DNA of 64,000 nt, from positions 620,001-684,000 of the forward strand of contig CM106586.1 of NCBI GenBank assembly GCA_048013815.1, read 5' to 3'. This document shows positions 18,134 to 30,551 of this stretch, piece by piece. The position numbers and the translations under genes were made by a program. The notes under the pieces are model-generated. The model made no database searches and was not told the DNA's origin. It saw only the letters and a program-made list of their open reading frames with translations. Numbering within the stretch: position 1 is the stretch's first letter; every line of letters starts with the position of its first letter. Origin of the DNA: Setoptus koraiensis (Eukaryota > Animalia > Arthropoda).

Positions 18134-18529
18134 TTTTTCTTGTATCTTGGATCGCTATAGATACCCGTAACTTATGAGAACTAAGACTTTTCACTACAAT
18201 CTTTGATTCTGATGATCGGTGATATTAGGCCGGGCGAGCGAAGCGAGCCGGTCTTTACAGATGCATTTTCGTTCTTTCCCCCTTTTGCTGCAAAAAAGTC
18301 CATAGAGTTTTCCCCTTCATCGTGTTGTCGGAAATCTGTGTGCTGCAGTGGAGAAAAAGTGTGCTTTCCCCCCTGTGCAGCAAAAAAGTCCATAGAGTTT
18401 TCCCCTTCTGAAAGTCAGCTGTGGTGTTCTCGTTCGTTCCCTTCGAGGCGTGGAGTGCCGCGGTGGGAGACGGGAGGGGGCGGGACTGGGAGGGTGGGAG
18501 GCGGGGAGCGTGCGCTGCGCAGCACAACA

Positions 18530-18815
18530 ACAGCTGCAGCAGTAGCAATGATTATGATAATAATGATGATAATGATAATAGTGATAGTAGTAATAATAAT
18601 AGTAGCAGTAGTGATAATAATAGTAGTAGTAGTAATAACAATAATAACAGTAGTAGTAATAATAACAGTAGTAGTAATAATAACAGTAGTAGTAGTAGTA
18701 GTACTAGTAGTAATAGCAGTAGCAGTAGTAATAGTAATAACAATAACAACAAAAACAAACAAAAAAAAATAAATAAAAAATAAAAAAAAATAAAAAAAAC
18801 AACAACAACAACAGC
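18530..18815. repeat. (AGT/AAT)n microsatellite and A-rich tract in the Helentron 5' region
   Basis: Direct inspection; source of several low-complexity ORF calls. Confidence 0.95.
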
Positions 18816-18842
18816 AGTATGCCTCAACATCAAGATAAGCGC

Positions 18843-19760
18843 GGATGTGAACCCAAAATGAGTTCTTTCCCGCAGCGCGGATGTGAACCCGCAATGAGTT
18901 CTTTCCCGCAGCGCCTCACAGGATGTGAACCCGTTATGAGTTCTTTCCCTAATTATACCGGATGTGAACCCGCAATGAGTTCTTTCCCGCAGCGCCTCAC
19001 AGGATGTGAACCCGTTATGAGTTCTTTCCCTAATTATACCGGATGTGAACCCGCAATGAGTTCTTTCCCGCAGCGCCTCACAGGATGTGAACCCGTTATG
19101 AGTTCTTTCCCTAATTATACCGGATGTGAACCCTCTATGAGTTCTTTCCCGCAGCGCCTCACAGGATGTGAACCCGTTATGAGTTCTTTCCCTAATTATA
19201 CCGGATGTGAACCCTTTATGAGTTCTTTCCCGCAGCGCCTCACAGGATGTGAACCCGTTATGAGTTCTTTCCCTAATTATACCGGATGTGAACCCGCAAT
19301 GAGTTCTTTCCCGCAGCGCCTTACAGGATGTGAACCCATTATGAGTTCTTTCCCTAATTATACCGGATGTGAACCAGAAATGGGTTCTTTCCCGCAGCGC
19401 CTTACAGGATGTGAACCCAGAATGGGTTCTTTCCCTGATTATACCGGATGTGAACCGGAAATGGGTTCTTTCCCGCAGCGGATGTGAACCGGAAATGGGT
19501 TCTTTCCCTAATTATATCATAGATGGATGTGAACCCGAAACGGGTTCTTTCCCGCAGTGCCTCACAGGAAGTGAACCCAGAATGGGTTCTTTCCCTGATT
19601 ATACCGGATGTGAACCTTCAATGAGTTCTTTCCCGCAGCGCCTCACAGGATGTGAACCCTTAATGAGTTCTTTCCCTAATTATACCGGATGTGAACCTTC
19701 AATGAGTTCTTTCCCGCAGCGCCTCACAGGATGTGAACCAGAAATGGGTTCTTTCCCTGA
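18843..19760 (+). repeat. Minisatellite of 23 units with 29-bp core ggatgtgaacc-N6-gagttctttccc (mostly alternating 42/39 bp)
   Basis: Units start at 18843, 18879, 18921, 18960 ... 19729; they translate as GCEPxMSSFP repeats. Confidence 0.95.
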
Positions 19761-22700
19761 TTACAGAATAGGTGGGAGCGACTCCTTGATTGGCGTTTTC
19801 CTGCAGAACCTTGCGCGATGCGACCCTGAAATTAGCCTTCCCCTGCTGCGCTTAAGAAGATGTGGACTCGAATTCGGTTCTTTCCTTCGTATGAGCAACG
19901 ATGATCTTGTATTTGAATTGGGTTCTATATTTGATGATCATCCGTGTTCGAGCTTCAATTCTCTTGCGTCAATCGTTGCTCATGGCGGTGGATATTCTCC
20001 AGATTCGCCGCACGATTCTTCAGATGAAGATCGTCATCCAGCTGAAAAGCCATTCTCTCGCCCACTCTCTAGGGCTGAGAAGATGAAATTGAAACGCGCC
20101 GATCCCGTTTTCAGAGCTGCTGAGAACGAGCGAAGGCGTGCCAACTATAAAGATAACGTTTCCGCTCATGATTACAAAGCGAAACAGATCAGAGCAAAGC
20201 GCTCCGATCCGGAGTTCGTTGCTGCTGAGCTTGCTCGCAAACGTGAATTGTACCAGAAAAATCCACATCCGACCATTGAGCGTATCAAAGAAAGACGTTC
20301 TGATTCGGTAAATTATTCACTAGAACTCGAGCGTAAAAAGTCATTGTATCATAGTGATAAATCGACAGCTGTTTGTGATTCAGATCCCTCTGTTGGCGAT
20401 GAGAGGCCGCAGCGAATTAGAACACAAAACAAGCGATACAATGATTATTACTTAGATAAGGACATCGAGTACCACAAGAAGGTTAGACTCGATCCTGAAT
20501 TCCGAAAGGCTGAGCTTGCAAAGTTGCAAAAGAAGCGCGAGAACGTAGCCTTTCGTGATAGAGAAGAGTTTGTCAAAAGGCGTTCTTACTTCGTTAAAAA
20601 AGTGAAATCATGGAACGACTTGGGCTTCTGTTTCTCTGGTTTAGATATTAATGAGGTTGACCAGAGACATTTGATAAAGATGAATGATGCTATAAGCACT
20701 TATTATCATGATTTGGCTCAGAGTTTTTTCCATGTATGCGTTGTGTGCTCTGGAACGTTTCGCGAATGTAGCCTAAAAAAATTTGACATTGAAGAATTCA
20801 GATCCGATATCGGTCAGGAATTCTTCGACAAGGTTGTGTCAGTATTTGATGAGCCGTTCCAAATATGTGGCACATGCTATTCCTACATTTTGAGGAAGAA
20901 AGTTCCCCCATTATGTATGAATAACGGGTTACGTTACGTTGCTTTACCAGAGTTTATTCGCACTCTCAACCCAATAGAACAGATTCTAGTATCTAATGTG
21001 ATACAATTTCGAAAAATTGTTGAGAATCGCCCTGAACACAATTCATGGATGCGTACTCACCCACATTTGTTCGGTAAGCCATCGATCATTAATGTACAGC
21101 TCGATCCTTCGGATGCCTTTTCAAAGGTTCAGAGTATTCCCCGTGCGCCGGATGAGTCGCTCTCGTGTGTTGTACGTCTTTTTAAACGACAACAATTTGC
21201 CGACATGAATCTGCATCCTCATGTACAAGGATTTATCGATCATGAAAAACTCGATAAAGCTGCTGCCTGGCTTGTTAAAACGCCCTTATATATTAAGGAT
21301 GGCATAAAATTCAAAGGCAAGGCTACCACGCAGAAAATTGCTGAAAAGTTCAATTCTGAGCGTGTTATTGATATGGAACTTGGTAAGGATATTCCTGATG
21401 AATTTCCCGATGCGATGTATCCACCCCAAGAGACATTCATCACACGGTTACCAGGTGCACCACTTGACATAGCTCCTGCCGAAGACCGACCTGCTATCAG
21501 CGCTCTCTTTGGTACCACTATCGATGAACGTCCATTTCCAACTATATTTGGTGGTCATCCTTATCCTAGTCCACCGCCCGCTGGGTCATCTTGGCCGAAA
21601 TTAACTTTGAGTCAGAGACTGAAGTTTGAAATGCGCAACGTCAGCACTCAACACAGACCTTGTGTGTATGTACTCTTTGGTGCTGCCAAAAAGTTGGCCA
21701 ATCAATTATATAGTGCGAGTTATACGGCGACAAGGATCTCTACCAAGACAAATGTTTTAACGGTTCAAGATGTTTTAGATCAGAAACATAGAAATGTTTT
21801 GATCAAAAACGATATGATGTTTACTTTGTATAAGCAGGTCCCCAACACACCTCAGTATTGGATGGCGCAGAGTAAAAAGTTACTCTTGGCTGTCTATGCC
21901 TTCGGTCCTCCTACCCTTTTCATGACCATAACAATTAACGAATCTGATGAGGCTGAGCTCTTAAGGTTACTCTACAGATTTAGGCACAATGTTTGGTTGA
22001 GTCAAAAAGATGTGCTTGAAGGTTTATCGCACTCTGAGAAAGCCGACTTGTTTCTCAATGATCCTGTGACTCTTTCTAGGTATTTCGAACTTAGGCAATC
22101 ATGCTTGATGAAATTCTTGAAGGATAAATATGGTGCTTTCGCTGGGTATAGAATTTATAAGTATTATTCACGGATCGAGTATCAACATAGGGGTTCACCT
22201 CATGCTCACATGATTTTCTGGTTAGAAGGTGCGCCGACATTCGATAAGGATGAGCCCTCATCTATACCCTCATGCGTTGATTTTATCGATAGGCACATAA
22301 CTACTCGTAGCGATCTATGTGATGAGCAAGTTGCCAAGCGCCAGTTCCACAAGCACACTAGAACTTGCCTAAAAATTAAGCATGGTAAAGTTGGTTGCAG
22401 ATTCAATCTACCCAGATATCCTATGGCCCAAACTTGCATTTTAGGTCCATTGATGGAAGGTGAGGTAGATAAAGCTGATATCCCCTCTGTGCGTGGACGT
22501 CTGTTAAAGATAAAGAATCTGCTCAAAGAGTGGACCCGTCCAATTCCTGGTGGTTATTTCCAGAGACAATCTGCATTGACATTTGATCAGTTTCTTGAAA
22601 AATTAGAAATGTCTCATGATCAATACATAGAAGCAATTAGATTGGGTCTTGAGAAACATAAAACTCTGTATAAATGTCAACCTTGCGATATAATGACTAA

Positions 22701-25700
22701 TAATTTTAATCCGATCATAGGCCCGATGATAAATGCCAACATGGACATTCAATTTGTGCTCGAGCCTTTCGGAGTAATCAAGTACTTAGTTAATTATTTG
22801 ACAAAAGCATCGGGTAAAGCGTCATTGGCGATGCGGGCTGTATTTGAGCATTACAAAAACCACAAAGCGTCGCACAATCCCCTAAAAGAAATGCTCAAGA
22901 CAATGTCTCGAGAACTCCTCAATTGTCTTGAGCTTGGTGCACCCGAAGCTGCTCTTATGTGTATAGGTGGCAAATTTCATGATTGTAACTGGAGTGAGGT
23001 TGTCGTGAATACTTCTCTGCCTAATGAAAGAACACGTATTCTGAAGCCGTTGAAAGAATTGGCTGAATTAGCTGACAAATCTTGCTCCGAAATATATCAT
23101 CCATCTGTCTACGAAAAGTATGAGAATAGACCCAAGAACCAATACAATATGTATTTTGCTGATTGGTTGACAAAGTATCAGGGTCAGACAGTTCATGATG
23201 AAAAGCCTGATTTCTTCGAGGATATTGTTGAATCAGAGCCCGATTTGTATACCGACAATCGTAAGGTGCTACGCATACACATTCCCAAATTGAAGGAAGA
23301 TCCCGAAAATTATTATCGTATCTTAATAACCTTCTTTGGTCGTCCATGGTTCAGTGAAATGACTGATATAATCAACAAAACTGAATCTTATGAGGAGCGC
23401 TATGAGAACGATCGTGATCTTATCACCGCTAATAGAAAACGGCACTACAAGTTGGATTTCGATGTGCAAGTCCGGTTGAAGGGTATGTTCGAACAAGAGC
23501 AACGTATCTTGGAAGATCAAGAAAATTTTAATTGCCCCATTCCTGATGACTTTATACCTCAAAGTAAATTGTCATTGGATGATTTCATTTTTGAAGAGTT
23601 CGATAAACGTGATTGCACCCGAAACAGACTCAATATCGAAAACATTGATGAAGACGCTGTTTTAGCAGAGCAACATACTAGTCATGGCAAGAAGCTCATT
23701 TATTTGAACAAGTTGAATAAAACCAAAAATGAACTTCTGGTCTTTTCAACGAAAGCTTCTGCCGACACCATGGATATCTGTTCACGTGTTGCTAGTCTAA
23801 ATGAAAAGCAGTATGTGTACGCTTCACATTTCGCTCACGCATTGAGATTGGGCAATCCATTCTATCATGTTGTATTGGGTGGTGCAGGTACTGGTAAATC
23901 TTTTCTCATAAAGACTCTGCATCGCATTGGGCTTGGCATTTTGGATGTTGATCCCGATGTTGATGTTGACGTTGAACAATTTCCCATTATGCTCACAGCT
24001 ACTTCTGCTTCTGCTGCATTTCTGATTGGTGGTTCAACTATGCACTCAGCTTTCCTACTTCCGGTAATGAGAGAGTTCACCAGTCTCAGCGAAGATACTC
24101 GCAGTACTCAAGCCAAAAAGTTCCTATCAACAAAAGTTATTTTTGTCGATGAGATATCAATGTGCTCTAATGCTATGTTGCATCAGATGAATGATAGGCT
24201 CATACAAATCAAGCAGTGTGATTTGCCTTTTGGTGGATGCTCCGTTGTATTTTTCGGCGATTTCAACCAGCTACCTCCTGTTGCTGCCAAGCCAGTGTAT
24301 GTGCCAACTGATATCACTGGTAACACGTATTTATGGCAGTTGTTTTCATGTTACGAGTTGGTTGACATCATGCGGCAGAAAGATGACAAAAGATTCGCCG
24401 AAACGTTATCACGAATAGCCAATGGGAATTTCGTTCAGCAAGACGTGGATCTCCTAAAGACACGGCTTTGTGGTGAAGATCATCCGATCAGTTTGAGTGA
24501 TATACCTGATGATGTTATACGGTTGTATCCCACTAACAAAGCCGTTAATGCTTACAACATTGAAGCTATGAGCAAAATTGAAGGAGATGCTATAGTTGTC
24601 CCAGCAGATGATTCCCTTCGATCCAAAGTTCGGTTGAACGTTGAAGCAACTCTGAATAAATTCTATAAGAAAGAATTAGAATCTAACAGAGGTATGCATT
24701 TGGGTTTGCCACAAACTTTAACTCTCAAGAAGGGTGCTGTCTATAAGATAACAACTAATATTGATACTAGTGATGGGCTCGTGAACGGTGCCGCGGGCAT
24801 ATTACAATATATAAGTTACATTATGCACCCCAAAAACCCATCAGCCAGGAGGCCTGGCCTCCTTTTCATGTCCTTCGAAAATAAAAGTATCGGTCAACGT
24901 GCGAGGCATGAATTCTTCCGCGAATACGTTAAAAAGAGTGAGATATTATCTACGATTCGTGAAGATTGGGTACCTATCACATTGAAACAAATCACCATAA
25001 GTGAGTTTGATTATTCAATTGATAGAATTCAATTTCCGATTGTTCCTGCACATGCTCGTACATATCATTCGAGTCAAGGTCAGACATGGACCTCTGCTGT
25101 CTGCAATTTGATGCCAATAAATAGAATCAATAGAAAGATGTTATATGTCGGATTCAGCCGCGTAACCAGCCTAAGTGGTCTTTTTATTGTTGGTGATCTA
25201 TCGAAAGCTTTAGAAAAATGCAGATCCGTGCCTGATAAACGTGCACCAGCTGCTAAGGGCAAGATAAAGATGGTTGATATTGACGAATGCGAGATGGAGC
25301 AGGATAGGTTTTTTGTAAATCAATTCAAGAAAAAATGCTCTCTCAACGCGTCAATCCTTTCTTCCCATAACCCGGTTGCTCCTTCTCTATTGTTTCATAG
25401 AATGGATCACCCGAAAACAAGTTCCATCGAGTTACGCAAAATTCTATCGATGAATAAATTTTCACTGATTTTCCTCTCAGAAACTTGTTTGAAGCCTAAT
25501 GCTCGCGTCGAATTTGCCGGCTATTATAACGTGAAACGTTTAGATTTCGAGTCCTCCGATCAAGTTTCGCGCCGTGGCCTGCTTTGCTGTGCGACGTATG
25601 ATTTAAAGGACGAGATTAAAGTGGGGCCTGCGAAAAGCAGCCAGAATCTAGAGGTTATGATTATTCAATACTTAGCCAATCATTATATCTTTATCTATGT

Positions 25701-26976
25701 GCGTCCTGGTCATAGTTGGTCGAATTTGAACGACAAGGTCATTTTACCGGCGCTTCAATATATCGACAAACATCCTGGTGGCAGATTTTACATTTTCGGC
25801 GAGTTCAATTGTAGAGTGACCAATCCTTCATATGCTCTGATGTGTGATGCGTTCCTTCAATACAAAATTTTCCCTCTGCTCGTTGAAGATGCCCTTAAAT
25901 CAATTGACGGTTTAACCTCCGAGTATATATTCACTAACGATAGAAATGTGAATATCGGTGTTGTTCGAACCATTGTGAGTTCGTTCTATCCCGTATATGT
26001 GACCAAACGGGACGTTACTAACACCATTGTGACAGAACCTCCGCCGCACAAGCCTAGCGATCGACATTATGAAGATCATAACGATGATAGTGTTGCCTAC
26101 TCTAGAAATGAGTTTTCTCAGAGCAAGTTCATCGGAATGCAATCAGATGAAGACTACTCCGATTGCTCGATCGCTTCTCAAGATTCTCGTGACTCTGATG
26201 CTTCTTCTCAGTCTTCCCAATTAGCATGCAATCCTGCCGAGGAATTTGTTTTGCGGAGCTCAGGGTTATCACAACCTACTGATATTATTGACATATCGGA
26301 TGATGACTCTGAGACTCAAATGGAAGTCGAAGCACAACCCGGCAATCTGTACTTAAAACGATATTTTAGCGAGTATTTCCTTTGTGAATATGAAGATGTT
26401 ACTCAGGGTGAGGTAGATATTTTGAATTCGACTGGATATCTCAATACCAATATCGTTAACTGTTTCCTCCACCTGTTACGTATCCAGTATGATGTTTTAC
26501 CGTTCGATTCGTTCTTCTATCCAATGTTGAGGCAAGAAATTTCTAGATTTGAATCATCTGACTTTGATAGAACATTTCCTGTGCATCTGAGATACCTAGA
26601 GGATCTTTTTGATCATCGAATTGCGCTGATACCGATTGTACTTGATGAACATTGGTCACTCGTCAAGGTTGACATCGATTCGCAAACCATTTCGCACTAT
26701 AATAGTCTTGTATCGGCGAGTAGTCGGTCTCACGGGTCGCAAGTATGTTCGAATTTGATCAAGTATTTGAAAATTGGAACTGGCATCGATTTCACTCTTT
26801 TGCCGACCCCTAGACCTCCTCAACAAGATAACGGATACGATTGTGGAGTATTTGTCTGTAAATATGCCCACTGTCTTGCCCTCGAACAAGATTTTCTCAA
26901 TTTTTCTCCCGCAGAAATGCGCGTTTATCGCCAGAAGATTAGACAGTCATTACTTTCTGAGACAATTGTTGTTTGA
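19369..26976 (+). CDS. Helentron RepHel polyprotein: Zn finger, HUH Rep, PIF1-family SF1 helicase, degenerate APE-like endonuclease, Ulp1/C48-like protease (true start uncertain)
   Basis: GPPTLFMT (21904); EYQHRGSPHAH (22177-22209); YLVNYLTK (22783); GGAGTGKS (23878); VDEISM (24145); FGDFNQLPPV; TYHSSQGQT; YVGFSRV; LSETCL and GEFN; HW..YNSL..QQDNGYDCG (26650-26847). Confidence 0.93.
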   Translation: MNQKWVLSRSALQDVNPEWVLSLIIPDVNRKWVLSRSGCEPEMGSFPNYIIDGCEPETGSFPQCLTGSEPRMGSFPDYTGCEPSMSSFPQRLTGCEPLMSSFPNYTGCEPSMSSFPQRLTGCEPEMGSFPDYRIGGSDSLIGVFLQNLARCDPEISLPLLRLRRCGLEFGSFLRMSNDDLVFELGSIFDDHPCSSFNSLASIVAHGGGYSPDSPHDSSDEDRHPAEKPFSRPLSRAEKMKLKRADPVFRAAENERRRANYKDNVSAHDYKAKQIRAKRSDPEFVAAELARKRELYQKNPHPTIERIKERRSDSVNYSLELERKKSLYHSDKSTAVCDSDPSVGDERPQRIRTQNKRYNDYYLDKDIEYHKKVRLDPEFRKAELAKLQKKRENVAFRDREEFVKRRSYFVKKVKSWNDLGFCFSGLDINEVDQRHLIKMNDAISTYYHDLAQSFFHVCVVCSGTFRECSLKKFDIEEFRSDIGQEFFDKVVSVFDEPFQICGTCYSYILRKKVPPLCMNNGLRYVALPEFIRTLNPIEQILVSNVIQFRKIVENRPEHNSWMRTHPHLFGKPSIINVQLDPSDAFSKVQSIPRAPDESLSCVVRLFKRQQFADMNLHPHVQGFIDHEKLDKAAAWLVKTPLYIKDGIKFKGKATTQKIAEKFNSERVIDMELGKDIPDEFPDAMYPPQETFITRLPGAPLDIAPAEDRPAISALFGTTIDERPFPTIFGGHPYPSPPPAGSSWPKLTLSQRLKFEMRNVSTQHRPCVYVLFGAAKKLANQLYSASYTATRISTKTNVLTVQDVLDQKHRNVLIKNDMMFTLYKQVPNTPQYWMAQSKKLLLAVYAFGPPTLFMTITINESDEAELLRLLYRFRHNVWLSQKDVLEGLSHSEKADLFLNDPVTLSRYFELRQSCLMKFLKDKYGAFAGYRIYKYYSRIEYQHRGSPHAHMIFWLEGAPTFDKDEPSSIPSCVDFIDRHITTRSDLCDEQVAKRQFHKHTRTCLKIKHGKVGCRFNLPRYPMAQTCILGPLMEGEVDKADIPSVRGRLLKIKNLLKEWTRPIPGGYFQRQSALTFDQFLEKLEMSHDQYIEAIRLGLEKHKTLYKCQPCDIMTNNFNPIIGPMINANMDIQFVLEPFGVIKYLVNYLTKASGKASLAMRAVFEHYKNHKASHNPLKEMLKTMSRELLNCLELGAPEAALMCIGGKFHDCNWSEVVVNTSLPNERTRILKPLKELAELADKSCSEIYHPSVYEKYENRPKNQYNMYFADWLTKYQGQTVHDEKPDFFEDIVESEPDLYTDNRKVLRIHIPKLKEDPENYYRILITFFGRPWFSEMTDIINKTESYEERYENDRDLITANRKRHYKLDFDVQVRLKGMFEQEQRILEDQENFNCPIPDDFIPQSKLSLDDFIFEEFDKRDCTRNRLNIENIDEDAVLAEQHTSHGKKLIYLNKLNKTKNELLVFSTKASADTMDICSRVASLNEKQYVYASHFAHALRLGNPFYHVVLGGAGTGKSFLIKTLHRIGLGILDVDPDVDVDVEQFPIMLTATSASAAFLIGGSTMHSAFLLPVMREFTSLSEDTRSTQAKKFLSTKVIFVDEISMCSNAMLHQMNDRLIQIKQCDLPFGGCSVVFFGDFNQLPPVAAKPVYVPTDITGNTYLWQLFSCYELVDIMRQKDDKRFAETLSRIANGNFVQQDVDLLKTRLCGEDHPISLSDIPDDVIRLYPTNKAVNAYNIEAMSKIEGDAIVVPADDSLRSKVRLNVEATLNKFYKKELESNRGMHLGLPQTLTLKKGAVYKITTNIDTSDGLVNGAAGILQYISYIMHPKNPSARRPGLLFMSFENKSIGQRARHEFFREYVKKSEILSTIREDWVPITLKQITISEFDYSIDRIQFPIVPAHARTYHSSQGQTWTSAVCNLMPINRINRKMLYVGFSRVTSLSGLFIVGDLSKALEKCRSVPDKRAPAAKGKIKMVDIDECEMEQDRFFVNQFKKKCSLNASILSSHNPVAPSLLFHRMDHPKTSSIELRKILSMNKFSLIFLSETCLKPNARVEFAGYYNVKRLDFESSDQVSRRGLLCCATYDLKDEIKVGPAKSSQNLEVMIIQYLANHYIFIYVRPGHSWSNLNDKVILPALQYIDKHPGGRFYIFGEFNCRVTNPSYALMCDAFLQYKIFPLLVEDALKSIDGLTSEYIFTNDRNVNIGVVRTIVSSFYPVYVTKRDVTNTIVTEPPPHKPSDRHYEDHNDDSVAYSRNEFSQSKFIGMQSDEDYSDCSIASQDSRDSDASSQSSQLACNPAEEFVLRSSGLSQPTDIIDISDDDSETQMEVEAQPGNLYLKRYFSEYFLCEYEDVTQGEVDILNSTGYLNTNIVNCFLHLLRIQYDVLPFDSFFYPMLRQEISRFESSDFDRTFPVHLRYLEDLFDHRIALIPIVLDEHWSLVKVDIDSQTISHYNSLVSASSRSHGSQVCSNLIKYLKIGTGIDFTLLPTPRPPQQDNGYDCGVFVCKYAHCLALEQDFLNFSPAEMRVYRQKIRQSLLSETIVV

Positions 26977-27048
26977 TATTAAAGTCTCCGCCTGTGTTTC
27001 GATATATGATGAACTTGAGATGTATCTAGGCCCAGATTGATGCAAATT

Positions 27049-27315
27049 GGAAGTGAACCTTCGACGGGTTCTTTCCCAGTCGCGCAAAATTGGAAGTGAA
27101 CCCTCGACGAGTTCTTTCCCAGTCGCGCAAAATTGGAAGTGAACCCTCGACGAGTTCTTTCCCAGTCGCGCAAAATTGGAAGTGAACCCTCAACGAGTTC
27201 TTTCCCAGTCGCGCAAAATTGGAAGTGAACCCTCAACGAGTTCTTTCCCAGTCGCGCAAAATTGGAAGTGAACCCTCAACGGGGCACTATTCGCTACAAC
27301 AACCGAGTTCTTTCC
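27049..27315 (+). repeat. 43-bp minisatellite (6 units) sharing the 29-bp core with the 5' array
   Basis: ggaagtgaacc-N6-gagttctttccc at 27049, 27092, 27135, 27178 and 27221, plus an interrupted unit at 27264. Confidence 0.93.
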
Positions 27316-27344
27316 CAGACGATAACAGAGTTGAGATAGATGAA

Positions 27345-27890
27345 GTTTAGGGTGGAAGATTCAGCATCAACGAAGTTTTTAGTCAGAGTGTACGTGGCGG
27401 AAGTAGATATATAGCATCATTATTTAGTCATCATCAGCAGTGGTTACGGTCGAGTCATGCGGAGTTAAGTTAGTTTAAGTTTGGGGTGGAAGATTCAGCA
27501 TCAACGAAGTTTTTATTTAGTCAGAGTGTACGTGGCGGAAGTAGATATATAGCATCATTATTTAGTCATCATCAGCAGTGGTTACGGTCGAGTCATGCGG
27601 AGTTAAGTTAGTTTAAGTTTGGGGTGGAAGATTCAGCATCAACGAAGTTTTTATTTAGTCAGAGTGTACGTGGCGGAAGTAGATATATAGCATCATTATT
27701 TAGTCATCATCAGCAGTGGTTACGGTCGAGTCATGCGGAGTTAAGTTAGTTTAAGTTTGGGGTGGAAGATTCAGCATCAACGAAGTTTTTATTTAGTCAG
27801 AGTGTACGTGGCGGAAGTAGATATATAGCATCATTATTTAGTCATCATCAGCAGTGGTTACGGTCGAGTCATACGGAGTTCAGCATCAAC
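27345..27890. repeat. 138-bp tandem repeat (about 4 units)
   Basis: ggtggaagattcagcatcaacgaag at 27351, 27485, 27623 and 27761. Confidence 0.95.
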
Positions 27891-28115
27891 AAAGTCTTTG
27901 GTAGGAGAACATGGAGCAAGATTGGATACTTGAAAATAAAATATATCAAGCAATAAGTTATATGCACAAATTCGTTTCTAGCACCACCTTGTTCGCACTT
28001 TTTTGTTGGTCTGGTAGTTGTTTTAGTGGTTGGTCGTTTGTCGTTTGGTTTGGTTTGGTTTGTTTATTTTATCGGTCGGTTGCCTTGTTGGTTTGTTGTT
28101 GGCGGTTTTATTTGG

Positions 28116-28235
28116 TTCGGTTCGGTTCGGTTCGGTTCGGTTCGGTTCGGTTCGGTTCGGTTCGGTTCGGTTCGGTTCGGTTCGGTTCGGTTCGGTTCGG
28201 TTCGGTTCGGTTCGGTTCGGTTCGGTTCGGTTCGG
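28116..28235 (+). repeat. (TTCGG)24 microsatellite
   Basis: Perfect 120-bp pentamer run preceded by degenerate T/G repeats. Confidence 0.98.
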
Positions 28236-28559
28236 TTTGTATGTTGGGTATATAGAACCGAAAGAACGGATCCGCTGGAAGGGTGTGTACAATGCGGATC
28301 CGCTCGGGTGTCATCGGTACGGCGGCACAGTATCACGGTTATAACCAATACTGTGCACGCCTGTTGTTGTCTATCTCTGTGCACTGCGCGCGTCGAACTT
28401 TATTGACGCGCGCGTGCAACACGTTATTACATTGTTTGTCGCATTGCCTCGGCGGATGCAATCATCTTGCCGTTGCGAAATCACAACGGCTAGATGATTG
28501 CATCCACCAGCAATGCCAGCACCGCCAGTCCGCCAGCATCACCGCCAGCATCAACACCA

Positions 28560-29790
28560 ACAGCAACAACCACCATCATCACCATCATCATTATTATCAT
28601 TATTATTATCATTATTATTGCTATTATTATTGCTATTATTATTATTATTATTGCTATTATTATTATTATTATTGCTATTATTATTATTATTATTGCTATT
28701 ATTATTATTATCATCATCACCATCACCATCATCGTCGTCACCACCAACATCATCCGCATCATAAGTGCAGTTGGTGATGTTTTCAAATTGGAACATCACC
28801 AACTGCACCGTTAATTACGGTGCTGTTGGTGGCCGGCAACAACGACAGCAGCAGCAACAACAGCAGCAACAACAAACCGGCCGACACCAGCGACGACAAC
28901 AACAACAGCAGCAGCAGAACCCCTTGCGGGCCCGCCAGCGTGCCAACCGGCGGCAACAACGGCAACAACAGCAGCAACAGCAACAACCAAAACAGCAGCA
29001 GCACCCACAACAGCACCAACAACAACAGCACCAACAACAACAGCACCAACAACAACAGCACCAACAACAAGAGCACCAACAACAACAGGACCAACAAGAG
29101 CAGCAACCACCGCCACCGCTCACCGCCGCTCAGCGCCAGCGCCGACGCCAACAACACCAACGCCAACAACACCAACGCCAACAACACCAACGCCAACAAC
29201 ACCAACAACCTCGGCCAGAACCTGTAGTGTTCGGGCCGGAACCTCTGTTCCGACCCGTCCTACACGTTCTGGCCGATGAATACGCCGGCCGCCGACGTCC
29301 TGGCGAGTCTCTCGACGCAAGACTCGCCAGGATGGAGGCCGAGCGGACGGCAGCAGCAGCAGCTTCAACAACATCAGCAGCAGCTTCAACAACATCAGCA
29401 GCAGCAGCAGCAGCTCCAACAACATCAGCAGCAACTCCAACAACATCAGCAGCAGCTCCAACAACATCAGCAGCAGCAGCTCCAACAACAACCACAACAG
29501 CACCACAACCAACAACAGCACCACAACCAACAACAACAGCAACACCAATAACAACAGCAGCAGCAGGAACAACAACAACAGCAACACCAATAACAACAGC
29601 AGCAGCAGGAACAACAACAACTCCAACATCAGCATCAACAGCAGCAGCAGGAACTCCCATGGAGGTGGATATGCCACAACAGCCACAGCAGCCACAACAG
29701 CCACAACAGCCACAACAGCTGCAGGAGCAACAACAGCAACAATAAAAAAAAATATTATTATTATCATTATCATTATTATTATTACCGCTG
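28560..29790. repeat. (ATT)n and (CAA/CAG)n low-complexity region interspersed with GC-rich hairpins; includes a doubtful 326-aa Q/T/A-rich ORF (28765-29745)
   Basis: Direct inspection. Confidence 0.85.
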
Positions 29791-30129
29791 TAACTATTAT
29801 TATTACAATAAAATTTGAGGCGAGCTCGCCCGGCCTCTCTTCGTTAGCCAGAACGAAAGGTTATTATATAGTGTAAAGTATTAGGGTCTATTATATCACT
29901 CAAATCTAGCATGTCAATGCTGTGTTTTCTCATGAAAATAAATTTCGTTGGATAGAAAAGACTGCCTCACTGATTACAGATTGGCTAGGGTGTTCTATCG
30001 AATAGTTTTTACCAAGATGGGAAAAAGTTATGCTACACCTTTCGAACAACATTTATTGGGTGTTCTTGCGAACTGGGCGTAGCTCAGTTCGCGACGAAAC
30101 TCATGGTGTGAGCTTCTTGGAGGCCTCTG

Positions 30130-30551
30130 ACGAGAAATATTTCGGACCGGAAGTGTAGAAACTTCCAGTTCCGGTTTTAGCTTCATCTTTGAGATACAGC
30201 CTTGAAACTCGGTATGTTAGTATATCAGACTAAGACAACCCCGATGACATCATCTTCAAATATCTACAACTTCCGGTTCTTGAGATATTCAGGAAAATTG
30301 CATGTATGGGCGAATCTGGTCTGGGTCTGTTCAGAGCCTACACCCAGAGTATGGCGACACGCATTCATGAACAAAACCCGGATCGATCACGGGCCCCGCC
30401 CACTCGACTCCCAGTCCTCGGGAAGAATCTTTTTTAGTTTGGGGGTGTTGTAGCGAATAGCGACCCAGTCAGATTTCGATGAAACTTCACACGTGGGGCC
30501 CGTAGGGTCCCCTGACAACAGTTTGAGTGGTCCGGAAGTGCGGAAACTTCC
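30130..30551 (+). repeat. Family A internal repeats running into the gap
   Basis: ccggaagtgtagaaacttccagttccggtttt and gagtggtccggaagtgcggaaacttcc match about 2905-2940; 30443-30530 is an inverted match to 2720-2815. Confidence 0.75.

What the first reader, a model, noticed from the sequence alone, without database searches (positions are those of the whole stretch)
18225..29862. Complete Helentron whose transposase ends in an Ulp1/SUMO-protease-like domain
Seen: both termini are intact with 13-bp perfectly matched subterminal repeats, and a 7.5-kb stop-free ORF ends in HW (26650), YNSL (26698) and QQDNGYDCG (Cys at 26842). Known: Helentrons have Rep motif 2 RGSPH, often carry an APE endonuclease and sometimes an OTU protease; C48 proteases use His-Asp-Cys, and SUMO pathways take part in transposon silencing. 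Here the triad Asp position is Asn. Inference: a young element carrying a possible counter-silencing deSUMOylase. I cannot say whether this fusion has been described.
Basis: partly seen in the sequence, partly recalled or inferred. Interest (0 to 1): 0.75.

Follow-up and report, generated by a model that had tools for sequence, protein, structure and literature searches.

The report
Helentron transposon carrying a SUMO-protease-like domain
An apparently intact rolling-circle transposon (Helentron) in a small arthropod genome has a SENP/Ulp1-type cysteine protease domain fused to the end of its transposase, a rare variant of the known habit of these elements of carrying ubiquitin-family proteases.

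Summary
Window ~18223-29865 is a two-ended Helentron. A 13-nt subterminal inverted repeat occurs exactly twice in the window (0.02 expected). A 3' hairpin keeps its pairing through compensatory changes in other copies. At least six short non-autonomous derivatives share both ends. The true 3' end is 29865, not 29862.

One stop-free frame (19369-26976; probable start ATG 19891, 2361 aa) encodes DUF6570, an HUH Rep (RGSPHAH), a Pif1 helicase, an endonuclease-like domain and a Peptidase_C48 domain.
- **C48 domain:** Pfam 70.7 bits; SENP2/SENP1 E~1e-15. The AlphaFold model (pLDDT 87) matches SENP1/2/5 and Ulp1. His, Gln and Cys are kept and the Asp is Asn. That variant occurs in 9 of 163 aligned relatives, so it does not by itself imply inactivity.
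- **Endonuclease domain:** homologous to a neighbouring Helentron's (E 2e-8), but several catalytic positions are substituted.
- **Copy number:** the coding part is single-copy in the 48.7-Mb assembly, so "young" is unproven.

Novelty is moderate. The HELIANO survey already lists Peptidase_C48 among domains carried by Helitron-like elements. Helentrons are known to carry OTU, VTD and UCH proteases, and Ginger1 and MULE transposons carry Ulp1. No in-frame RepHel-C48 protein turned up in the searches. Counter-silencing is speculation.

The parts
18223..18239 (+). 5' terminus (TATT/TT, exact first base uncertain between 18223 and 18226) plus the 13-nt 5' subterminal inverted repeat at 18227-18239
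   Evidence: Homology with 9 other genomic copies starts at 18222-18228. The 13-mer occurs only twice in the window, 0.02 expected.
18271..18408 (+). Two 48-nt direct repeats (92% identical) in the 5' leader, shared with the short non-autonomous copies
   Evidence: Repeat family D16. The 5' 210-290 nt are conserved in other copies.
18878..19763 (+). 81-bp tandem array, 11 copies. It is open in the ORF frame and gives the spurious first ~170 codons.
   Evidence: Tandem Repeats Finder score 1347; translation.
19891..26976 (+). Transposase ORF from the first ATG after the array (2361 aa plus stop). The open frame itself starts at 19369.
20893..21294 (+). DUF6570 (Cys-rich, zinc-finger-like). HELIANO reports this domain almost only in HLE2/Helentron-type elements.
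   Evidence: Pfam 3.2e-9; HELIANO text.
21703..22215 (+). Rep (HUH) nuclease domain with the IEYQHRGSPHAH motif. The two-tyrosine motif YLVNYLTK lies downstream.
   Evidence: Helitron_like_N 1.2e-19. The Ser between G and P is diagnostic of Helentrons per PMC4067079.
23860..25161 (+). Pif1-type SF1 helicase (Walker A GGAGTGKS, DE box, FSRVTS motif)
   Evidence: PIF1 4.8e-25, AAA_19, AAA_30 and UvrD_C_2; translation.
25384..26001 (+). Endonuclease-like (EEP/APE-type) domain with substituted catalytic positions: HN to HR, GDFN to GEFN, SYH to SSF. The ET glutamate is kept.
   Evidence: BLASTP E 2e-8 to the C-terminal domain of the neighbouring Helentron ORF. All ten top protein-language-model clusters are Exo_endo_phos, score 0.96. 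No Pfam or PDB hit. Motif alignment.
26284..26316 (+). IIDISDDDSE within an acidic, Ser-rich linker. It looks like a SUMO-interacting motif (hydrophobic core followed by an acidic/Ser run).
   Evidence: Pattern scan. Reading it as a SIM is inference from the general SIM consensus and was not tested.
26440..26943 (+). Peptidase_C48 (Ulp1/SENP) domain: His2428 (26650), Asn2445 (26701) in place of Asp, Gln2486, Cys2492 (26842). The first 'tunnel' Trp is Tyr2357.
   Evidence: Pfam 70.7-75.6 bits. SENP2 and SENP1 E~1e-15 over the whole domain. AF2 pLDDT 87.3 and Foldseek SENP1/2/5/Ulp1 E~1e-14.
27044..27880 (+). 43-bp (5.5 copies) and 138-bp (4 copies) tandem arrays downstream of the ORF. The 43-bp unit is ~70% similar to the upstream 81-bp unit.
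28114..29742 (+). Microsatellites and low-complexity tracts: (GGTTC)25, (ATT)n and CAA/CAG-rich arrays. The ORFs listed here are low-complexity artefacts.
29824..29836 (-). 3' subterminal inverted repeat, embedded in the 12-nt palindrome GGCGAGCTCGCC
29840..29857 (+). 3' hairpin TTCGTT-AGCCAG-AACGAA, 8 nt from the end
   Evidence: All 66 cells are paired in 11 copies, and 2 of 6 pairs show compensatory double changes.
29858..29865 (+). 3' terminus, ending in GGTTATT
   Evidence: Homology of 6 of 10 other copies ends exactly at 29865, the rest within 2 nt.

Best explanation
This is the autonomous member of a low-copy Helentron (HLE2) family in a small arthropod genome; an earlier scan note calls the animal a mite.

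Shown:
- Helentron-type termini: 13-nt subTIRs, a 3' hairpin, and short derivatives sharing both ends.
- One uninterrupted gene with the order DUF6570, HUH Rep, Pif1 helicase, endonuclease-like domain, acidic linker, C48 protease.
- The C48 domain is a real SENP1/2-like fold that keeps the catalytic His, the oxyanion Gln and the Cys. Its third triad residue is Asn.
- Related Helentrons in other animals carry OTU, VTD or UCH proteases, which this element lacks.

Inferred:
- Rep and helicase move the element by rolling-circle transposition and also mobilise the short copies.
- The endonuclease-like domain is probably inactive.
- The C48 domain is probably an active isopeptidase for a ubiquitin-like modifier, most likely SUMO. 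It would fill the slot that OTU/VTD deubiquitinases fill in other Helentrons, acting in trans on host conjugates at the site of transposition.
- The target is unknown: SUMO-dependent chromatin silencing, or SUMO-regulated replication and repair factors.
For: - Termini and family. The layout matches the mite Helentron/HINE anatomy in PMC4067079.
- Domains: Pfam, with intact HUH, two-Tyr and helicase motifs.
- C48 domain: SENP2 9.8e-16 and SENP1 3e-15 with aligned H, Q and C. The AF2 model has pLDDT 87.3 and pTM 0.85. Foldseek puts SENP1/2/5/3 and Ulp1 first at E~1e-14, well ahead of NEDP1 (1e-8) and bacterial CE deubiquitinases.
- Asn variant: found in 9 of 163 aligned relatives, all of which keep His and Cys.
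- No recent donor: the nearest C48 genes in the same genome are only 29-33% identical.
- Relatives: RepHel relatives carry OTU, Herpes_teg_N (VTD) or UCH, and none carries C48.
- Precedent for activity: Helentron VTD domains are proven active deubiquitinases (PMC9741609).
- A SIM-like motif sits just upstream of the domain.
Against: - The canonical Asp is missing, and the first tunnel Trp is Tyr (6 of 163 relatives).
- With only one coding copy, purifying selection on the C48 part cannot be measured.
- The adjacent EN-like domain has lost catalytic residues, so parts of this protein may be decaying.
- No expression or activity data exist.
- SUMO specificity rests on similarity ranking only.
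- No empty site was found, so the TT target and the exact 5' base are unproven.
Confidence: 0.6

Rival explanations
1. The C48 domain is a passenger. It would be an old captured fragment that stays open by chance or through recent arrival of the element, is catalytically impaired (Asn for Asp, Tyr for Trp), and contributes nothing to transposition.
For: - Triad Asp is replaced, and a tunnel Trp is replaced.
- The neighbouring EN-like domain has degenerated.
- The coding region is single-copy, so constraint is unproven.
- HELIANO treats such domains as captures of uncertain use.
Against: - His, Gln and Cys, and 11 further near-invariant family positions, are kept.
- The predicted fold is confident.
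- The domain is only 29-33% identical to any gene in the genome, so it is not a fresh capture. Even so, it has no stop or frameshift over 218 codons within a 2535-codon open frame.
- Asn recurs in natural relatives that keep His and Cys.
Confidence: 0.2
2. The domain is active but is a deubiquitinase or deNEDDylase rather than a SUMO protease. It would then be a direct functional replacement for the OTU/VTD domains of other Helentrons.
For: - Helentron VTDs cleave ubiquitin and NEDD8 but not SUMO (PMC9741609).
- CE-clan enzymes include NEDP1 and bacterial deubiquitinases, which also appear in the fold hits.
- Weak Pfam hits to LupA and ElaD/SseL ubiquitin proteases.
Against: - Sequence and fold hits to SUMO-specific SENP1/2/5/3 and Ulp1 are 6-8 orders of magnitude better than those to NEDP1 or the CE deubiquitinases.
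- A SIM-like motif sits upstream.
Confidence: 0.12
3. The protease works in cis. Like adenain-type and poxvirus/asfarvirus CE proteases, it would cut the 2361-aa polyprotein into Rep-helicase and accessory pieces.
For: - CE-clan viral proteases process polyproteins at Gly-Gly-X sites (general knowledge).
- MPXV core protease appears among the distant fold hits.
Against: - None of the nine GG sites in the ORF lies in an inter-domain linker. There is none between the EN-like and C48 domains.
- The closest relatives are isopeptidases, not processing proteases.
Confidence: 0.04
4. The locus is no longer a transposon but a domesticated single-copy host gene that still sits between old termini.
For: - The coding region is single-copy in a compact 48.7-Mb genome.
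- The EN-like domain is probably inactive.
Against: - Both termini, the subTIRs and the hairpin are intact and match mobile short copies at up to 98%.
- The Rep HUH and Tyr motifs and the helicase motifs are intact.
- Internal tandem arrays typical of Helentrons are retained.
Confidence: 0.04

Closest known systems
Helentrons and their HINE/DINE-1 derivatives (Thomas et al. 2014, PMC4067079; the HLE2 group of HELIANO, PMC11417382)
   Same: - The RGSPHxH Rep signature, a Pif1 helicase and a C-terminal endonuclease-type domain.
- DUF6570.
- 12-15-nt subTIRs 2-4 nt from the 5' end, and a short 3' hairpin.
- Internal tandem repeats and microsatellites.
- Short non-autonomous derivatives, and T-rich ends.
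   Different: - An extra C48 protease is fused in frame after the endonuclease-like domain.
- No OTU, VTD or RPA is present.
- The endonuclease domain is below Pfam detection and has substituted catalytic residues.
Helentron-encoded ubiquitin-family proteases: OTU, VTD (Erven et al. 2022, PMC9741609) and UCH (HELIANO)
   Same: A cysteine protease for ubiquitin-like modifiers, built into the transposase gene of a Helentron. VTD domains have been shown to be active enzymes.
   Different: - A different protease clan (CE/C48, not OTU, VTD or USP).
- A different position (C-terminal, not N-terminal to Rep).
- A different probable substrate (SUMO rather than ubiquitin or NEDD8).
Peptidase_C48 listed among 20 domains 'stably included' in Helitron-like elements (HELIANO, NAR 2024, PMC11417382)
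   Same: The same Pfam family associated with Helitron-like elements.
   Different: - The paper gives no taxon, element class or architecture for C48 in its main text.
- It names DUF6570, Herpes_Helicase, Herpes_teg_N and UvrD_C_2 as likely sharing the RepHel ORF and says the other 17 domains lie in different ORFs. Here C48 is in the same frame as RepHel.
- Supplementary Table S11 could not be read.
Ulp1 domains at the C-terminus of Ginger1 transposases, and in MULE (KI-MULE/VANC-KIU) and CACTA elements (PMC2836005, PMC13317346)
   Same: A C48/Ulp1 domain fused to, or carried beside, a transposase. A role in transposition or anti-silencing has been proposed but never demonstrated.
   Different: Those are DDE cut-and-paste transposons. 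This is a rolling-circle HUH/helicase element.
Host SENP1/2-type SUMO proteases
   Same: The fold, His-Gln-Cys, the HW and NGxDCG motifs, and overall domain length.
   Different: - Asn replaces the triad Asp, and Tyr replaces the first tunnel Trp.
- Identity is only 29% to the genome's own SENP1-like gene.
- It is closer (32%, 112 bits) to two small tandem C48-only ORFs on the other contig.

Membership tests
Helentron (HLE2 rolling-circle transposon) | HUH Rep with the motif-2 signature (V/I)ExQxRGSPHxH (Ser between G and P) and a two-Tyr motif | tested here: met
   IEYQHRGSPHAH and YLVNYLTK are in the translation. Helitron_like_N scores 1.2e-19. The criterion comes from PMC4067079.
Helentron (HLE2 rolling-circle transposon) | Pif1-like SF1 helicase fused C-terminal to Rep | tested here: met
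   PIF1 4.8e-25 at aa 1498-1690, plus AAA_19, AAA_30 and UvrD_C_2.
Helentron (HLE2 rolling-circle transposon) | AP-endonuclease (Exo_endo_phos) domain C-terminal to the helicase | tested here: inconclusive
   - A homologous domain is present: E 2e-8 to the neighbouring Helentron's C-terminal domain, and all top Atlas clusters are Exo_endo_phos.
- It gets no Pfam or PDB hit, and an HMM built from 6 Helentron EN domains is not significant.
- Single-sequence AF2 failed.
- Catalytic Asn, Asp and His positions are substituted.
Helentron (HLE2 rolling-circle transposon) | 12-15-nt subterminal inverted repeats a few nt from the 5' end, and a short palindrome near the 3' end | tested here: met
   The 13-nt subTIR starts 2-4 nt from the 5' end. 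The 6-bp-stem hairpin lies 8 nt from the 3' end and shows covariation.
Helentron (HLE2 rolling-circle transposon) | Insertion between T and T without target-site duplication | tested here: inconclusive
   The ends are T-rich (TATT... ...TTATT) and the flanks differ between copies. No empty site was found, and the one paralogue of the right flank (L013) does not match the left flank.
Helentron (HLE2 rolling-circle transposon) | Non-autonomous derivatives sharing both termini | tested here: met
   17 5'-end and 12 3'-end matches were found in the assembly. At least six elements of 348-516 bp carry both ends.
Peptidase C48 (Ulp1/SENP, clan CE) | Sequence match to PF02902 above the gathering score | tested here: met
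   70.7 bits in the whole ORF and 75.6 bits for the domain alone, against a cutoff of 20.7.
Peptidase C48 (Ulp1/SENP, clan CE) | Ulp1 fold | tested here: met
   The AF2 model built from a 51-row alignment has pLDDT 87.3 and pTM 0.85. Foldseek top hits are SENP1, SENP2, SENP5, SENP3 and Ulp1 at E 1e-14 to 1e-11, TM ~0.7.
Peptidase C48 (Ulp1/SENP, clan CE) | Catalytic His, nucleophile Cys and oxyanion Gln | tested here: met
   H2428, C2492 and Q2486 align with the SENP1/2 residues. These columns are 94-95% conserved in relatives.
Peptidase C48 (Ulp1/SENP, clan CE) | Catalytic Asp as third triad member | tested here: not met
   - Asn2445 aligns with the SENP Asp.
- Among 163 aligned relatives, Asp occurs 144 times and Asn 9 times.
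- It is therefore filed as a C48-family homologue with a variant triad, not as a proven active C48 peptidase.
Peptidase C48 (Ulp1/SENP, clan CE) | SUMO-specific isopeptidase or processing activity | not testable with these tools
   This needs an enzyme assay.

The most novel reading that the evidence does not exclude
A Helentron lineage has replaced the usual OTU/VTD deubiquitinase with a transposase-tethered SUMO protease. The protease has its own SIM-like motif and a His-Asn-Cys triad, and it strips SUMO from host chromatin-silencing or repair factors at the element. That would make it a transposon-encoded deSUMOylase acting as an anti-silencing device in an animal.
Probability: 0.15. Interest if true: 0.75.

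Novelty: new variant of a known kind. Interest (0 to 1): 0.42.

Why it matters
Helentrons repeatedly acquire proteases of the ubiquitin system, and only the VTD class has been tested biochemically. A SENP-type domain welded to an apparently intact RepHel transposase would extend that pattern from ubiquitin and NEDD8 to SUMO. It would also give a compact, testable construct for asking why rolling-circle transposons need such enzymes. Two candidate reasons are countering SUMO-dependent silencing and tuning SUMO-regulated replication and repair.

The element is also a clean reference copy of an autonomous Helentron with its short derivatives in a very small genome. The idea itself is not new. C48 in Helitron-like elements is already listed in a survey, and Ulp1-transposase fusions are known in Ginger1 and MULEs.

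Tried and rejected
- **Full-length RepHel-C48 relatives, by the C48 region:** a word-indexed search with length window 1394-4436 aa found no hit.
- **Exhaustive HMMER search with the C48 domain:** 2687 hits, the best only 35% identical. None of the top 150 is a RepHel fusion. The one protein of similar length (P0114, 2567 aa) has C48 only.
- **RepHel search:** 18 Helentron-like proteins at 29% identity or less, none with PF02902. These absences are weak evidence, because transposon ORFs are often unannotated and only the top hits were seen.
- **EN domain:** Pfam and PDB sequence searches were blank. An HMM of six Helentron EN domains was not significant. Single-sequence AlphaFold failed at pLDDT 34, and no fold search was run on that model.
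- **Empty-site test:** the 98% paralogue of the right flank (L013) does not match the left flank.
- **HELIANO supplementary tables:** not held.
- **Self-processing at a linker Gly-Gly:** no such site exists.
- **Transposon context for the two tandem C48 ORFs on contig 1:** no transposase or long terminal repeats were seen within 10 kb.
- **Host taxon:** only arthropod-like SENP hits were obtained. The 'mite' label comes from an earlier scan note and was not verified.
Full report
**Observation**

The window holds one long open frame on the + strand, 19369-26976, with 2535 codons and no stop.
- HW starts at 26650.
- YNSL starts at 26698.
- QQDNGYDCG starts at 26821, and its Cys codon is at 26842.

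The 13-nt AGGCCGGGCGAGC lies at 18227-18239 on the + strand and at 29824-29836 on the - strand. These are the only two matches in 64 kb even with one mismatch allowed, against 0.02 expected from shuffles.

**Boundaries and family**

The window is G000:C2:620001-684000 of a 48.7-Mb assembly in two contigs.
- The first 296 nt of the element match 16 other places, and the last ~86 nt match 11 other places.
- Homology with other copies begins at 18222-18228 and ends at GGTTATT, which is 29865.
- At least six places carry both ends 348-516 bp apart, for example C2:24080706-24081105 and C2:16658140-16658534. These are short non-autonomous derivatives, 81-98% identical to the master at the termini.
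- The 3' hairpin (29840-29845 pairing with 29852-29857) is paired in all 66 cells of 11 copies. Two of its six pairs show compensatory double changes.
- The 3' subTIR sits inside a 12-nt palindrome.

This layout includes a subTIR 2-4 nt from the 5' end, a hairpin 8 nt from the 3' end, and internal tandem arrays and microsatellites. It is the anatomy described for mite and insect Helentrons and their HINE/DINE-1 derivatives (PMC4067079). No empty site was found, so the TT target and the exact first base remain open.

**The gene**

The first ~170 codons are a translated 81-bp tandem array. The likely start is the ATG at 19891, giving 2361 aa.

Pfam finds four domains:
- DUF6570 at aa 509-642.
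- Helitron_like_N at aa 779-949.
- PIF1 at aa 1498-1690.
- Peptidase_C48 at aa 2358-2525, scoring 70.7 bits against a cutoff of 20.7.

The Rep motif IEYQHRGSPHAH has the Ser that distinguishes Helentrons from Helitrons. The two-Tyr motif and the helicase Walker A, Walker B and later motifs are intact.

The closest RepHel proteins in a 5.8-billion-protein collection are at most 29% identical. They are typical Helentron proteins, several from oysters, carrying OTU, Herpes_teg_N (VTD), Exo_endo_phos or, in one case, UCH. None carries C48.

**Endonuclease-like domain**

The stretch between helicase and C48 (aa ~2006-2211) gets no Pfam or PDB sequence hit. A profile built from six Helentron EN domains is not significant either.

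Other evidence does place it in the endonuclease family:
- It aligns at E 2e-8 (27% over 206 aa) with the C-terminal domain of a second Helentron ORF of 1671 aa. That ORF lies just left of the window at C2:614110-617514 and has a weak Exo_endo_phos_2 hit.
- All ten nearest named protein-language-model clusters are Exo_endo_phos, with a score of 0.96.

It is therefore a homologue of the Helentron endonuclease. In the alignments the neighbour keeps the N of YNIQS, together with ET, GDFN and SYH. This element instead has FHRMD (the Asn is Arg), ET, GEFN and SSF. I infer that the domain is probably catalytically impaired. Single-sequence AlphaFold failed at pLDDT 34, so the fold is not confirmed.

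**The C48 domain**

- **Sequence:** phmmer against PDB sequences gives SENP2 at 9.8e-16 and SENP1 at 3e-15 over the whole domain. SENP5, SENP3 and Ulp1 follow, and NEDP1 and chlamydial enzymes are far weaker.
- **Catalytic residues:** His2428-Trp, Gln2486 and Cys2492 align with the catalytic His, oxyanion Gln and Cys of SENP1/2. Asn2445 aligns with the Asp.
- **Fold:** an AlphaFold model from a 51-row alignment has pLDDT 87.3 and pTM 0.85. Foldseek ranks SENP1, SENP2, SENP5, SENP3 and Ulp1 first, at E 1e-14 to 1e-11 and TM about 0.7.
- **Asn variant:** among 163 domain stretches from the 150 best relatives, the triad position is Asp 144 times and Asn 9 times. All nine Asn cases keep His and Cys. 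Asn is thus a recurrent natural variant, and clan CE proteases with His-Asn-Cys are known from my own knowledge (asfarvirus pS273R). Asn does not by itself argue for inactivity.
- **Tunnel Trp:** the first tunnel Trp is Tyr, which occurs in 6 of 163 relatives.
- **SIM-like motif:** just upstream, IIDISDDDSE in an acidic, Ser-rich linker looks like a SUMO-interacting motif. This is inference.

**Origin of the domain**

- The genome's canonical SENP1-like gene (C1:10835757-10836320, a 419-aa ORF, 45-57% identical to named insect and chelicerate SENP1) is only 29% identical to the Helentron domain.
- Two small tandem C48-only ORFs at C1:5.313-5.315 Mb are closer, at 32% identity, 112 bits and E 4e-33. 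They show no transposon context within 10 kb.
- An exhaustive HMMER scan of 1.84 billion representatives found nothing above 35-39% identity, not even a self-cluster.

The domain is therefore not a recent capture from any gene now in this genome.

**Copy number and age**

DNA and protein searches of the whole assembly find the coding part only once. The 2535-codon open frame argues that the gene has not decayed. 'Young' cannot be shown from copy divergence, and selection on the C48 part cannot be measured here.

**What is already known**

- The HELIANO survey (NAR 2024, PMC11417382) lists Peptidase_C48 among 20 domains 'stably included' in Helitron-like elements. It names DUF6570, Herpes_Helicase, Herpes_teg_N and UvrD_C_2 as likely sharing the RepHel ORF and says the other 17 are in different ORFs. 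No detail on C48 is given in the text, and the supplement is not held.
- Helentron VTD domains are proven ubiquitin/NEDD8 proteases that do not cleave SUMO. The authors note that Helitrons seem to benefit from deubiquitination supplied by different protease classes (PMC9741609).
- Ulp1 domains sit at the C-terminus of Ginger1 transposases and occur in MULEs (PMC2836005). They are also fused to the VANC anti-silencing factor in plant VANDAL elements, where the function of the Ulp1 part is unknown (PMC13317346).
- I found no paper describing an in-frame RepHel-EN-C48 protein.

**Verdict**

This is a real, complete, apparently coding-competent Helentron with a genuine SENP-type domain fused in frame. 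I class it as a new variant of a known kind.

The most likely role is an active isopeptidase for a ubiquitin-like modifier, probably SUMO, occupying the niche of OTU/VTD in other Helentrons. The counter-silencing idea is plausible by analogy but untested.

Noticed in passing
G000:C2:614110-617514 (-), 2.5-6 kb left of the window start; locus L025:505-5517: A second, different Helentron ORF of 1671 aa with DUF6570, Rep, PIF1 and a weak Exo_endo_phos_2 hit. It is 32% identical to this one, keeps the canonical endonuclease motifs and has no C48 domain.
   Followed up: partly
G000:C1:5312970-5315300 (-); L026:1495-2529 and L033:5423-6298: Two tandem small ORFs (345 and 291 aa) that consist of an acidic, Ser-rich N-terminus plus a C48 domain with the canonical Asp. 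They are the closest in-genome relatives of the Helentron C48 (32%, E 4e-33). No transposase or terminal repeats were seen within 10 kb.
   Followed up: partly
window 29861-30400 versus G000:C2:1861953-1862700 (L013): The right flank of the element has a 98% (then 88%) paralogue elsewhere on the same contig. It starts exactly at the element's end, but the left flank does not match. The Helentron may therefore abut another repeat rather than sit in a simple duplicated site.
   Followed up: partly
window 18878-19763 and 27044-27281: The 81-bp array upstream of the ORF and the 43-bp array downstream share a ~70% similar core (GAACCC..GAGTTCTTTCCC). The coding region is thus bracketed by related repeats in the same orientation.
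   Followed up: partly
window 20083-20560 (ORF aa 239-400): Three copies of a basic motif of the form R-x-D-P-x-F-x-x-A-E followed by a K/R-rich helix-like stretch, N-terminal to DUF6570. This may be a DNA-binding or nuclear-localisation repeat, and it gets no Pfam hit.
   Followed up: no
whole ORF, window 19369-26976: Neither the ORF nor any protein at least 50% identical to its C48 domain is present in the 15-billion-protein collection. The best RepHel relatives are at most 29% identical, so this Helentron lineage is poorly sampled.
   Followed up: yes
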